Shown piece by piece: positions 35,391 to 37,220 of a stretch of 40,795 nt of DNA. Position 1 is the stretch's first letter. The number at the start of each line of letters is the position of its first letter. Position numbers and translations under genes: made by a program. This DNA comes from Octopus bimaculoides. Lineage: Eukaryota. The notes beneath the pieces were generated by a model. The model had not been told where the DNA came from. It did no database searches and saw only the letters and a program-made list of their open reading frames with translations. The DNA is taken from NCBI RefSeq assembly GCF_001194135.2, contig NC_068984.1, forward strand, positions 26,198,712-26,239,506, given 5' to 3'.

Positions 35391-36140
35391 GTTTTCAATT
35401 CCCTTCCTATATATTCTGGAATAAGTTTCATTATAATGGGAACACACCATTTCGAACTGTCTCTTGTATCTTCTATAAAACCTGTTACATTCCTCTTGAC
35501 TTAAATTCAGAGATTTGCATGCAGTGGATTAAATACTAAGCAAGTATTGCAGTTTGCAGGGCTAACAAATGGAGGAAACATGTTTCGTTAGTCACACTTG
35601 GAAGTCTACTATAAAGATGCTTTCATCGTTTTCATTTATGTTCTCCGACCTAGTGGAGATCCTGTAAATCCGTGCTTAGCTATTATACATTTTCCATAAT
35701 ATATAATTGCTGTAACTCATGTACATAGCGGGCATAGATTTTAGATGGCGGACATGGAGGAGCTGCTTTGTGCATTCTATAATCTATAATCTTTGTGGAT
35801 TCTAAATTATGGGTTAATAGCCATAATTCAGTATCTAGTGCGGTCCAGTCTTGTATTGCAGTACCTAAACAACCAGTCAAAGGCAATATAAATACTCTGG
35901 TAGATTGTTTATGGTTACCTGGTTTCTACTTCTGAGATGTTCATCAGAGAACAAATACAAGTGTTCTGTTAATGTAGCTTATAGCGATTTATAGTGTATA
36001 CAAAATTGGACATAGCCACACAGAACAGATGAGCTGTGTCCGAGTTTTGGATATATACTAAATAGCAATGAATTTCTAAGTAGATGTATGTATGTATGTA
36101 TGTATGTATGTATGTATGTATGTATGTATGTATGTATGTA

Positions 36141-36255
36141 TGTCATTGTTCAGTTTTATTTCAAGATTTCTTGCCAATAGAGAAAGAGTTGGTTTCTAAC
36201 GTAGATCCAAGACTCCTTCATCGGAATTTCAACATCAACAACAAGGTATTTTTGT
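36141..36255 (-). mobile_element. 3'-terminal ~115-bp fragment of the (TACA)n-associated RLE element
   Basis: Diverged duplicate of 36301-36415, flanked by (TATG)n on both sides. Confidence 0.75.
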
Positions 36256-36300
36256 CTGTATGTATGTATGTATGTATGTATGTATGTATGCATGTAGGTA

Positions 36301-36697
36301 TGTCATTATTCAGTTTTTGTTTCAAGATTTCTTGCAAAAGGAGAAAGAACCGGTTTTTAACCTAGGTCCAAGGCTCCTTCACCGATTTTCGACATCAATA
36401 ACATGGTATTTTTGTATGTATGTATGTATGTATACGTGCAGATATGTATGTTTTGCTTTATGTATGTCTTCTCGTGCATATACTTGCATATCTAGACATG
36501 CTCATATATACTTAAATGATAAACTTCTGGAAAGTTTTACAGATTTTTACAGTTCTAGTGATGGATTGGATCTGTAGTTTTCTAATCAGATTTCTCCTTT
36601 TTGGTTTTGAGAAGCCTAATTTTTTAAGACTGATATTTAGGCAGTGTGTTCCATATCCCAATGCCCCAATAATTACAAGTATAAACCTGAACTTGTA
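36301..36697 (-). mobile_element. RLE non-LTR retrotransposon 3' end (second lineage), 5'-truncated, in (TACA)n
   Basis: YKFRFILVIIGALGYGTHCLNISLKKLGFSKPKRRNLIRKLQIQSITRTVKICKTFQKFII* (stop at 36512) shares the IGALG...LKK(L/I)G...LQ layout with the RLE copy at 3421-3699. 3' UTR ends ...aaactgaataatgaca then (TACA)n. Confidence 0.78.
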
Positions 36698-37220
36698 TGT
36701 ATGTATGTATGTATGTATGTATGTATGCATGTATGTATGTATGTATGTATGTATGCATGTATGTATATATGTATTTGTATGTTTATATTTATATGCGTGT
36801 GAGTGTGTATATCTATATATATATATGTGTGTGTGTGTGTGTATAAATATATATGTATGTGTGTGTGTTTATATATATATATATATATATATGAATGTAT
36901 ATAAATGGGTATATTTTACATACGTTATATTTCAAATATAAAAAGGTAAGCACATTATTGCTAAATTGATATATGAATAGAAGCATCAATATGAATAAGA
37001 AAATATATATACATACATGTATGTGTGCATGTATGTGTGCATGTATGTGTAAAGAAGTACGCACAGAAACGCATATGCAAATATGAGCGTTGTGTGTGTG
37101 TGTGTGTATGACGGCGCGCGCATGTTTGTGCATGTGCGTAATATGACGTTGCATGAATTTGCATAGATTAAACTATGAATTTCCAGGAGTTTTGTTTATA
37201 TTTTTACAATTTTAACATAT

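What the first reader, a model, noticed from the sequence alone, without database searches (positions are those of the whole stretch)
36085..36765. RLE retrotransposon that appears to target and regenerate the (TACA)n tetranucleotide microsatellite
Seen on the minus strand: (CATA)n, then the end of an ORF with an RLE-type C-terminus, a 3' UTR ending ...aaactgaataatgaca, (TACA)n, a second shorter copy of the same 3' end, and (TACA)n again. Every junction falls in the same tetranucleotide, and the terminus (...gaca) runs in phase into taca. Established: several non-LTR families are microsatellite-specific, for example Dong (R4 clade) in TAA repeats. I do not know of an RLE family described as specific for (TACA)n. 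Inference: this is a site-specific element that reinserts into its own tail, which could help explain the abundant TATG/CATA tracts in this DNA. Novelty is not verified.
Basis: partly seen in the sequence, partly recalled or inferred. Interest (0 to 1): 0.78.

Follow-up and report, generated by a model that had tools for sequence, protein, structure and literature searches.

The report
Dong-like retrotransposon tied to (TACA)n microsatellites
Two broken copies of a very abundant octopus jumping gene sit head to tail inside a TACA repeat. Relatives in other animals show that a whole branch of the Dong/R2-like retrotransposons is tied to this microsatellite, most likely because it inserts there, which I found described in no paper.

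Summary
On the minus strand the order is (CATA)n, a 59-codon ORF tail with stop, a 3' UTR, (TACA)n, a second 112-nt copy of the 3' end (83% identical), and (TACA)15.

It is a 5'-truncated non-LTR retrotransposon of the restriction-like-endonuclease (RLE) group, with roughly 3,000 copies in this genome. Full-length relatives (~1,150 aa) have an N-terminal three-helix domain, RT, a CCHC motif and a PD..D/E..K nuclease. They match R2 structures. They are colinear with (TAA)n-flanked Dong-like elements, one cluster of which lies in this window.

In a well-supported sister clade of those Dong-like elements, all seven elements whose flanks I could read carry (TACA)n. Five have it 5' of the element and six at the 3' end. 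One nested family uses (CTTA)n instead. About 80% of octopus copies continue into perfect (TACA)n, and several octopus 5' junctions abut it.

Target specificity for (TACA)n is therefore the best reading (about 0.65), but it is not proven. Three related species have no (TACA)n at the one orthologous boundary I could read, and some 5' junctions lack it. The element accounts for less than 1% of the genome's TACA tracts.

Verdict: a new variant of a known kind. No paper found describes it; Repbase and Dfam could not be checked.

The parts
36694..36765 (-). (CATA)n tract directly 5' of the truncated copy, with two G interruptions. It continues into a longer TA/CA-rich low-complexity block up to about 36900.
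36694..36697 (-). TACA microhomology at the 5' junction. The family sequence reads gatTACAAGttc and the window reads caTACAAGttc, so the truncation point falls on an internal TACA of the element.
   Evidence: one search compared with L002
36515..36691 (-). Last 59 codons of the single ORF, with the stop codon at 36514-36512. In the full-length relative P0161 this part corresponds to the last beta-strand (IPVIIGALG) and the two C-terminal helices of the RLE domain.
36434..36511 (-). 3' UTR, first part.
36413..36432 (-). Internal (TACA)5 of the 3' UTR, native to the family.
36301..36415 (-). Terminal 3' UTR unit of copy 1 ('unit A'), ending ...ctgaataatgaca.
36350..36373 (-). Conserved 3' UTR hairpin motif in unit A (CCTTG-stem-loop-stem-CCGG).
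36256..36300 (-). (TACA)n between the two copies: the tail of copy 1 and the 5' flank of copy 2. Its 5' part is decayed (tacCtacatGca).
36144..36255 (-). Second copy ('unit B'): the last 112 nt of the 3' UTR, 83% identical to unit A. Both units differ from the family consensus only at private positions.
36189..36212 (-). The hairpin motif in unit B, decayed (TCTTG...CCAA).
36084..36143 (-). Perfect (TACA)15 tail of unit B. Homology with three related species stops at its outer edge (36086).

Best explanation
The locus holds two 5'-truncated copies of one high-copy family of non-LTR retrotransposons from the restriction-like-endonuclease (R2-like) group. The family is most closely allied to the (TAA)n-specific Dong elements.

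Shown:
- The family has roughly 3,000 copies.
- Its single ORF, read in full-length relatives, has an N-terminal three-helix domain, RT, CCHC and a PD..D/E..K nuclease.
- Its 3' UTR carries a hairpin supported by covariation, about 40-60 nt before the end.
- Most copies end in (TACA)n, always starting in the phase N|ATAC.
- The same repeat, in the same orientation, lies 5' of truncated and full-length copies in several lineages.

Inferred, by analogy with R2 and Dong:
- The protein binds its 3' UTR RNA and recognises (TACA)n DNA, probably through the N-terminal domain.
- It nicks the (TGTA)n strand at a fixed position in the repeat unit.
- The nick primes reverse transcription, with the RNA's own (UACA)n end annealed to it.
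- The 5' end is joined by microhomology. A TACA microhomology is visible at 36697-36694.
- Each insertion splits the target tract and leaves a fresh (TACA)n tail. That tail is itself a target, which produces head-to-tail arrays such as this one.
- Units A and B are two separate copies, not a recent local duplication.
For: RLE identity:
- L001 reads YRPDIMIWD...VVEISCPADVN...EKENIY upstream of the same C-terminus.
- The alignments show CCHC, RH, N(R/K)PD, E and K..Y.
- Pfam finds RVT_1.
- P0161 matches R2 sequences in the PDB at E = 3e-28.
- Its AlphaFold model (pLDDT 81) matches R2 structures at E = 7e-33 to 7e-27.

Affinity with Dong:
- P0161 is colinear over about 1,000 aa with P0200 and P0198 (26-31% identity, 363-477 bits).
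- P0200 and P0198 are flanked by (TAA)n.
- The two groups share an N-terminal domain.

Copy number and tail:
- Read depth is about 2,000 in 1.93 Gb of reads, for both the ORF tail and the 3' unit.
- About 81% of reads at the terminus run on into the repeat, and they correct the window's two imperfect positions to perfect (TGTA)n.

5' flanks carrying (TACA)n:
- Window copy 1 and unit B.
- L002 from O. vulgaris.
- Full-length L004, L010 and L016, and L017.
- Transcribed octopus copies truncated at 36650, 36618 and about 36524.
- Protein read-throughs (HTYI)n in P0068, P0074 and P0146.

Other support:
- The nested (CTTA)n family has CTTA at both 3' ends and a 5' junction (L006-L008, L012).
- Bootstrap support is 99-100%.
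- Tandem arrays joining different families (L016, L017) argue for insertion into existing tails.
- Hairpin covariation: 91.8% of cells paired against 66% in shuffles, 0 of 500 shuffles as high.
- Units A and B show private differences only.
Against: - In three related species the single-copy left flank runs to 36086 and then continues as GATACATTATTCTC.... That is neither (TGTA)n nor unit B, so no (TACA)n tract is visible at that ancestral boundary.
- The O. vulgaris copy L002 has no (TACA)n at its 3' end.
- At least two transcribed copies have 5' junctions without TACA.
- Several upstream tracts are only 3-5 units long.
- No full-length octopus copy and no genome-wide table of flanks could be obtained.
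- The evidence from other organisms comes from unnamed metagenome and assembly contigs.
- No reference sequences of R4, Dong, HERO or NeSL were available, so clade placement is indirect.
Confidence: 0.65

Rival explanations
1. The element inserts with little or no sequence specificity, and (TACA)n is only its 3' tail. On this view the (TACA)n found 5' of copies, and the head-to-tail arrays, arise within one integration event. The reverse transcriptase jumps from the end of one RNA template to the (UACA)n 3' end of another, as R2 reverse transcriptase is known to do in vitro (established knowledge, not tested here).
For: - The orthologous boundary in three relatives has no (TACA)n.
- Units A and B are about equally diverged from the consensus, which fits one event.
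- Short 3-5 unit tracts at some 5' junctions are followed by unique DNA.
- Some 5' junctions lack TACA.
Against: - Tandem arrays join different families (L016: foreign 3' UTR + tail + full-length element; L017: the P0175 family, about 920 bp of (TACA)n, then the P0189 family). A single-event origin would need two unrelated RNAs in one complex.
- Long pure arrays (41, 23 and 19 units) lie 5' of elements. In L017 and L004 the array abuts DNA that shows no similarity to a 3' UTR of this lineage.
- A nested family switched both its tail and its 5' flank together to (CTTA)n.
- The 3' junction phase N|ATAC is identical in all families, which suggests a fixed nick site.
- The (TAA)n Dong relatives show the same pattern and are accepted as target-specific (PMC7998251, PMC3812793).
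Confidence: 0.2
2. There was one insertion. It was followed by a local tandem duplication of [3' unit + (TACA)n], through unequal crossing-over or replication slippage between the internal (TACA)5 and the tail.
For: - Tandem Repeats Finder reports period 160 x 2.2 copies.
- The duplicated unit is bounded on both sides by the same microsatellite.
Against: - The two units are 17% different.
- Each differs from the family consensus only at private positions, with no shared derived changes apart from a CpG site.
- A duplication would therefore have to date from the time of insertion.
- Similar arrays elsewhere join different families.
Confidence: 0.1
3. The 112-115-nt unit is a separate short non-autonomous (SINE-like) element with a (TACA)n tail that landed next to the LINE fragment.
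For: The unit is preceded by a short (TACA)5 in copy 1, so it could be read as a separate insertion.
Against: - Read depth of the unit (about 1,800) equals that of the ORF tail (about 2,000), so there is no excess of free units.
- The unit follows the ORF and the internal repeat in the same order in L001 and L002.
- The unit carries the 3' UTR hairpin shared with full-length relatives.
Confidence: 0.03

Closest known systems
Dong (R4/Dong clade; Bombyx mori, Anopheles, Biomphalaria and others)
   Same: - Single ORF with RT, CCHC and a C-terminal restriction-like endonuclease.
- No N-terminal zinc fingers, but a short helical N-terminal domain.
- A microsatellite on both sides of copies, and head-to-tail arrays.
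- P0161 aligns colinearly over about 1,000 aa with (TAA)n-flanked elements.
- A Dong-like (TAA)n cluster lies in this same window at 2702-4768.
   Different: - The flanking microsatellite is (TACA)n, or (CTTA)n in one sub-family, not (TAA)n.
- The lineage forms a separate clade with 100% bootstrap support, at only 26-31% identity to the (TAA)n group.
- The putative recognition helix of the N-terminal domain differs: LRQQA..VEKK against QRLSDQ...
R2 (28S rDNA-specific RLE element; solved structures 8GH6, 8IBW, 9DOU, 9NL2/3)
   Same: - Overall fold and domain order of RT, linker, CCHC and RLE.
- The presumed mechanism: binding of 3' UTR RNA followed by target-primed reverse transcription.
   Different: - Sequence similarity is limited to the RT domain and the CCHC motif (about 100 bits).
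- The N-terminal zinc fingers of R2 are absent.
- The target is a microsatellite, not rDNA.
Waldo (R1 clade), specific for (ACAY)n
   Same: The class of microsatellite: (ACAT)n is the same repeat as (TACA)n (PMC3812793).
   Different: Waldo has an N-terminal APE-type endonuclease and belongs to an unrelated clade. Here the nuclease is a C-terminal RLE and no APE domain is present.
Togen ((TG)n) and microsatellite-specific HERO families (NeSL/HERO side of the RLE group)
   Same: They are RLE elements reported as microsatellite-specific (PMC4640811).
   Different: Their microsatellites differ.

Membership tests
RLE-bearing non-LTR retrotransposons (R2 group) | Reverse transcriptase domain of non-LTR type | tested here: met
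   RVT_1 is found in 48 of 53 relatives. The RT matches R2 in the PDB at E = 3e-28. The window copy itself is truncated and has lost its RT.
RLE-bearing non-LTR retrotransposons (R2 group) | C-terminal CCHC motif followed by a PD-(D/E)XK nuclease | tested here: met
   In P0161 the near-invariant residues are C955, C958, H967 and C972; R984-H985; P1041-D1042; D1063; and K1073. L001 shows RPDI..EISCP..EKENIY directly upstream of the window-type C-terminus. The model matches R2 structures over 900-1,200 alignment columns.
R4/Dong clade | RT phylogeny groups it with R4, Dong and Rex6 references | tested here: inconclusive
   No reference sequences were available. It is colinear with, and the sister clade to, (TAA)n-flanked elements that include a moth protein. 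HERO and NeSL references could not be compared.
R4/Dong clade | No N-terminal zinc fingers; a divergent Myb/SANT-like N-terminal domain (PMC7998251) | tested here: inconclusive
   The motif WT.ELN..Y...GY..R.K.LWD is conserved. A three-helix bundle is predicted at residues 21-76 with pLDDT 80-90. Pfam finds no zinc finger at the N-terminus. The bundle was not compared separately with Myb folds.
Dong (in the strict sense) | Insertion in (TAA)n | tested here: not met
   The flanks are (TACA)n in all seven sampled members of the clade and in the octopus copies.
Microsatellite-specific retrotransposon (functional class) | The same microsatellite on both sides of copies, including the 5' side of full-length copies | tested here: met
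   L010, L016 and L017 have it on both sides, and L004 on the 5' side. Octopus truncated copies show it too.
Microsatellite-specific retrotransposon (functional class) | Empty (pre-insertion) sites contain the microsatellite | tested here: inconclusive
   Three related species show no (TACA)n at the left boundary. The right breakpoint was not found, so a larger rearrangement is not excluded.
Waldo / R1 clade | N-terminal APE-type endonuclease | tested here: not met
   There is no Exo_endo_phos hit in 53 relatives, and the nuclease is a C-terminal RLE.
NeSL clade | N-terminal zinc finger and a cysteine-protease domain upstream of RT (from my own knowledge of NeSL-1) | tested here: not met
   Pfam finds no protease or zinc-finger family in the N-terminal 380 residues of any of the 53 relatives. 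This is a negative result from Pfam only.

The most novel reading that the evidence does not exclude
A previously undescribed, widely distributed sister clade of Dong has switched its microsatellite target from (TAA)n to (TACA)n, and in one nested family on to (CTTA)n. The switches are accompanied by changes in the third helix of a conserved N-terminal three-helix domain, while a 3' UTR hairpin shared with the (TAA)n group is retained. That would make it a natural series for working out how R2-like retrotransposons are re-targeted.
Probability: 0.4. Interest if true: 0.65.

Novelty: new variant of a known kind. Interest (0 to 1): 0.5.

Why it matters
Site-specific R2-like elements are models for target-primed reverse transcription and are being developed as gene-insertion tools (PMC13586686, PMC13580325). 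This lineage offers closely related elements that keep the same architecture but sit in three different microsatellites: TAA, TACA and CTTA. With a candidate recognition domain and a conserved 3' UTR hairpin in hand, the question of what sets the target becomes testable by domain swaps.

For cephalopod genomics, the result shows that part of what is annotated as 'Dong-R4' is a distinct lineage associated with (TACA)n. It also corrects the idea that this element accounts for the genome's many TACA tracts.

Tried and rejected
- Word-index protein searches with the 59-62-aa tail found nothing, or one 55-aa hit. The exhaustive HMMER search was needed.
- A PDB search with the tail alone found nothing.
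- Loose-end tables show only the best-supported classes. A genome-wide table of 5' junctions from DNA reads was therefore impossible. RNA reads gave a few junctions only because single transcribed copies are deeply covered.
- No full-length octopus copy was found. The collections hold almost no octopus ORFs of this family.
- The 30 nt that follow the flank in the relatives were searched for in the window, without result.
- I considered that those relatives carry an old unit B, because the sequences share CATTATTC. I rejected this because identity collapses after 8 nt while the flank is about 95% identical.
- Single-sequence folding of the 3' unit is not more stable than shuffles (z = -0.6). 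Only covariation supports the hairpin.
- Literature searches for a (TACA)n/(ACAT)n-specific RLE family found none.

Full report
**1. The observation**

Read on the minus strand, the region is laid out exactly as described:
- (CATA)n at 36765-36694.
- An open frame of 59 codons at 36691-36515, with its stop at 36514-36512.
- A 3' UTR that ends ...aaactgaataatgaca at 36301.
- (TACA)n.
- A second copy of the last 112 nt at 36255-36144.
- A perfect (TACA)15 at 36143-36084.

The two 3' units are 83% identical (E about 1e-28) and have no other match in the window. Tandem Repeats Finder reports the block as period 160 x 2.2 copies.

Related copies have it too, so it is a native feature.

**2. What the element is**

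Raw genomic reads of the same species pile up about 2,000 deep on both the ORF tail and the 3' unit, from only 1.93 Gb of reads sampled. For a genome of about 2.7 Gb (a figure from my own memory of octopus genomes) that means roughly 3,000 copies. It also means the unit is part of the element and not a more abundant free SINE.

The majority letters of those reads give the family C-terminus: FRFIPVIIGALGYVTHCLNTNLEKLGFSKPERRKLIRRLQIQSITGTVKICKTFQKFII.

An exhaustive HMMER search found 211 relatives. One is an annotated Octopus vulgaris protein (P0002). Others are C-terminal fragments and full-length proteins of about 1,150 aa.

A metagenome contig (L001) reads YRPDIMIWD...VVEISCPADVN...EKENIY directly upstream of the same C-terminus. 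Alignments of the longer relatives show the full set of motifs: C..C....ED..H....C, RH, N(R/K)PD, E and K..Y. This is the CCHC plus PD-(D/E)XK module of restriction-like-endonuclease (RLE) retrotransposons.

Further support:
- Pfam finds RVT_1.
- The closest full-length relative, P0161, is 60% identical to the octopus tail. It matches R2 proteins in the PDB at E = 3e-28.
- Its AlphaFold model (pLDDT 81) has R2 structures as its best Foldseek matches, at E = 7e-33 to 7e-27.

In that model the residues kept in the window form the last beta-strand and the two C-terminal helices of the nuclease domain.

**3. Affinity**

P0161 aligns colinearly over about 1,000 residues with P0200 and with a moth protein, P0198 (26-31% identity, 363-477 bits). 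With R2 it shares only the RT domain and the CCHC motif.

P0200 and P0198 are flanked by (TAA)n, which is the behaviour that defines Dong (PMC3812793, PMC7998251).

The two groups share a conserved N-terminal domain with no zinc fingers. It is predicted as a three-helix bundle. This agrees with the Myb/SANT-like domain reported for R4/Dong (PMC7998251).

Octopus repeat annotations list 'Dong-R4' among the abundant, recently active LINEs (PMC13282606, PMC8967140, PMC9115989).

I therefore place the family beside Dong. I had no reference sequences of R4, HERO or NeSL, so this placement is indirect.

**4. The association with the microsatellite**

*3' ends in octopus.* About 81% of reads that reach the 3' terminus run on into the repeat. 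They correct the window's two imperfect positions to perfect (TGTA)n (36291 C>T in 69% of reads, 36297 G>T in 93%). A class of 604 loose ends reads ATGTATGTATGTATGTATGTCATTGTTCAG.

*5' junctions in octopus.* Junctions that abut sense-oriented (TACA)n are seen in:
- window copy 1;
- unit B;
- the O. vulgaris copy L002, where the flank is (CCAT)5(CATA)3;
- three transcribed truncated copies revealed by RNA reads, at 36650, 36618 and about 36524.

Two other transcribed copies have 5' junctions without TACA.

*Other organisms.* These are unnamed assembly contigs.
- L010 is a complete 4.4-kb element with (CATA)19 at the 5' side and (ATAC)n at the 3' side.
- L016 is a full-length element in a 794-kb contig, with (CATA)13 and (ATAC)21.
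- L017 has (ACAT)23 at the 5' side. At the 3' side it has about 920 bp of (TACA)n, followed by a full-length element of another family.
- L004 has (CATA)41 directly 5' of a full-length element.
- L005, L011 and L018 end in (CATA)n.
- Three further 5'-truncated copies translate their upstream flank as (HTYI)n.

*Phylogeny.* In a neighbour-joining tree these elements form a clade separate from the (TAA)n group, with 100% bootstrap support. All seven members with known flanks carry (TACA)n. A family with (CTTA)n tails is nested inside the clade as the sister of P0161 (99%). One of its truncated copies also has (CTTA)n at the 5' junction.

*Background and phase.* TACA-type tracts cover only about 1% of the window, so the 5' association is far beyond chance. 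All 3' junctions can be written N|ATACATAC, which suggests a fixed nick position in the repeat unit.

**5. A conserved RNA element**

About 40-60 nt before the tail, the 3' UTRs share CCTTG-stem-(T)TGT(T)-stem-CCGG. This holds for the TACA and CTTA families and for one TAA family.

On an alignment of 11 elements:
- 91.8% of cells pair, against 66% in shuffles (0 of 500 shuffles as high).
- The covariation score is 0.69 against 0.23.
- Versions with the 3' partners slid by 1-3 columns pair at 27-45%.
- Three inner pairs are never broken, and 4-6 sequences change both sides.

The motif lies at 36373-36350 in unit A and, decayed, at 36212-36189 in unit B. By analogy with R2 it is a likely protein-binding site. 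That is an inference.

**6. How the array arose**

Units A and B each differ from the family consensus only at private positions. They are therefore not a recent local duplication.

Head-to-tail arrays are common in this group:
- The window's own Dong-like cluster in (TAA)n.
- L014.
- L016, where the DNA upstream of the 5' repeat is the 3' UTR of a different family, hairpin included.
- L017, where two families are joined.

Arrays that join different families are what repeated insertion into earlier tails predicts. They are awkward for a single-event origin by template jumping.

The 5' junction of copy 1 falls on an internal TACA of the element (36697-36694). This is a microhomology of the kind expected for 5' end joining.

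**7. What argues against simple target specificity**

Contigs of three related species cover the single-copy left flank at about 95% identity up to 36086, which is the outer edge of the (TACA)15. They then continue as GATACATTATTCTCTGACGAAATTCTGGGA. That is neither the repeat nor unit B, and it occurs nowhere in the window. A fourth species' contig stops at 36082.

On the right side I found no single-copy orthologue. Depth is zero at 37147-37172, and the rest is SINE and (TG)n.

The second breakpoint therefore remains unknown. The block absent from the relatives is longer than 1.1 kb and includes more than the element copies.

The result is one-sided. It shows that no (TACA)n tract is visible at that ancestral boundary. 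It does not distinguish insertion into non-repeat DNA from a larger rearrangement.

Also against simple specificity: L002 lacks a 3' repeat, and some upstream tracts are only 3-5 units long.

**8. The abundance of TACA tracts**

Ten of the 14 TACA-type tracts in the window have no copy of the element nearby. Extrapolating from this one window to an assumed 2.7-Gb genome gives about 700,000 tracts, against about 3,000 copies. Several tracts lie at the composite tails of an abundant SINE. The element does not explain them.

**9. Distribution and expression**

Exact 31-mers of the family occur in DNA runs of at least four other related species and in RNA runs of three. RNA-seq covers the family at a depth of about 300 with no strand bias. 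That fits copies embedded in other transcripts and does not show autonomous activity.

**10. Novelty**

Known microsatellite-specific non-LTR elements are:
- Dong, (TAA)n;
- Waldo, (ACAY)n, APE-type;
- Mino, (AC)n;
- Kibi, (TC)n;
- Koshi, (TTC)n;
- Togen, (TG)n;
- some HERO families (PMC3812793, PMC4640811).

I found no paper describing an RLE lineage tied to (TACA)n or (CTTA)n. Repbase and Dfam could not be consulted, and octopus 'Dong' consensus sequences exist (PMC9115989). The family itself is therefore probably catalogued, even if its target is not discussed.

**Verdict**

This is a real feature, correctly seen, and a new variant of a known kind. Confidence that it is a Dong-like RLE retrotransposon is about 0.95. 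Confidence that it selects (TACA)n as its target is about 0.65.

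Noticed in passing
window 2702-4768 (+): A cluster of Dong-like RLE retrotransposon copies sits in (TAA)n. In order: (AAT)20 at 2702-2761; a truncated copy at 2762-3067; (ATA)4; a copy at 3081-3787 with CCHC, RLE and the C-terminal ORF 3421-3699; (ATA)19 at 3790-3847; and further Dong-like fragments at 3876-4179 and 4398-4768. 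It has the same head-to-tail architecture as the TACA locus.
   Followed up: partly
window 13910-14047, 24954-25108, 29878-30016, 30381-30535, 34304-34425 (+); 26798-26866, 37470-37632 (-): Seven copies of an abundant SINE. The adjoining stretch 37225-37420, which overlaps none of the seven copies, also looks SINE-like and reaches word depths in the millions in related species. The 3' ends of these copies run into composite TG/TA/TGTA or CATA microsatellites. Several of the window's TACA-type tracts are these tails (for example 14077-14100 and 30017-30040).
   Followed up: partly
window 36086 and 36087-37225: Homology with three related species ends exactly at the outer edge of the (TACA)15. 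At least 1.1 kb to the right has no single-copy counterpart in them. The relatives' continuation begins GATACATTATTC, which shares 8 nt (CATTATTC) with the element's 3' end read on the + strand. This is unexplained.
   Followed up: partly
window 4912-5226 (-): An ORF reading ...DGDVMPPFIFPH...QQDSAPCHT...NSPDYKP looks like a fragment of a mariner/Tc1-type transposase.
   Followed up: no
window 23021-23130: A 36-bp tandem repeat, 3.1 copies, 98% matching (TTGATTCCAGATAAACCAATTCAGTTTACTTGTATA).
   Followed up: no
L001 220-251: In this related copy an (ATGT)n tract interrupts the ORF between EKENI and YAELIRN. It has the opposite orientation to the tail. It may be a tail-only insertion in antisense orientation or a local expansion.
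   Followed up: no
L015 230-330 and 940-1040: A related cephalopod-type family in a Logan contig has two 3' units about 700 bp apart. Their tails are AT-rich (aaataataaataaatataat) and not (TACA)n.
   Followed up: no
L008 1-51: The (CTTA)n-tailed element L008 starts the contig with (ATA)17. It is unclear whether this is coding poly-Asn/Ile in the N-terminus or a 5' junction in a different microsatellite.
   Followed up: no
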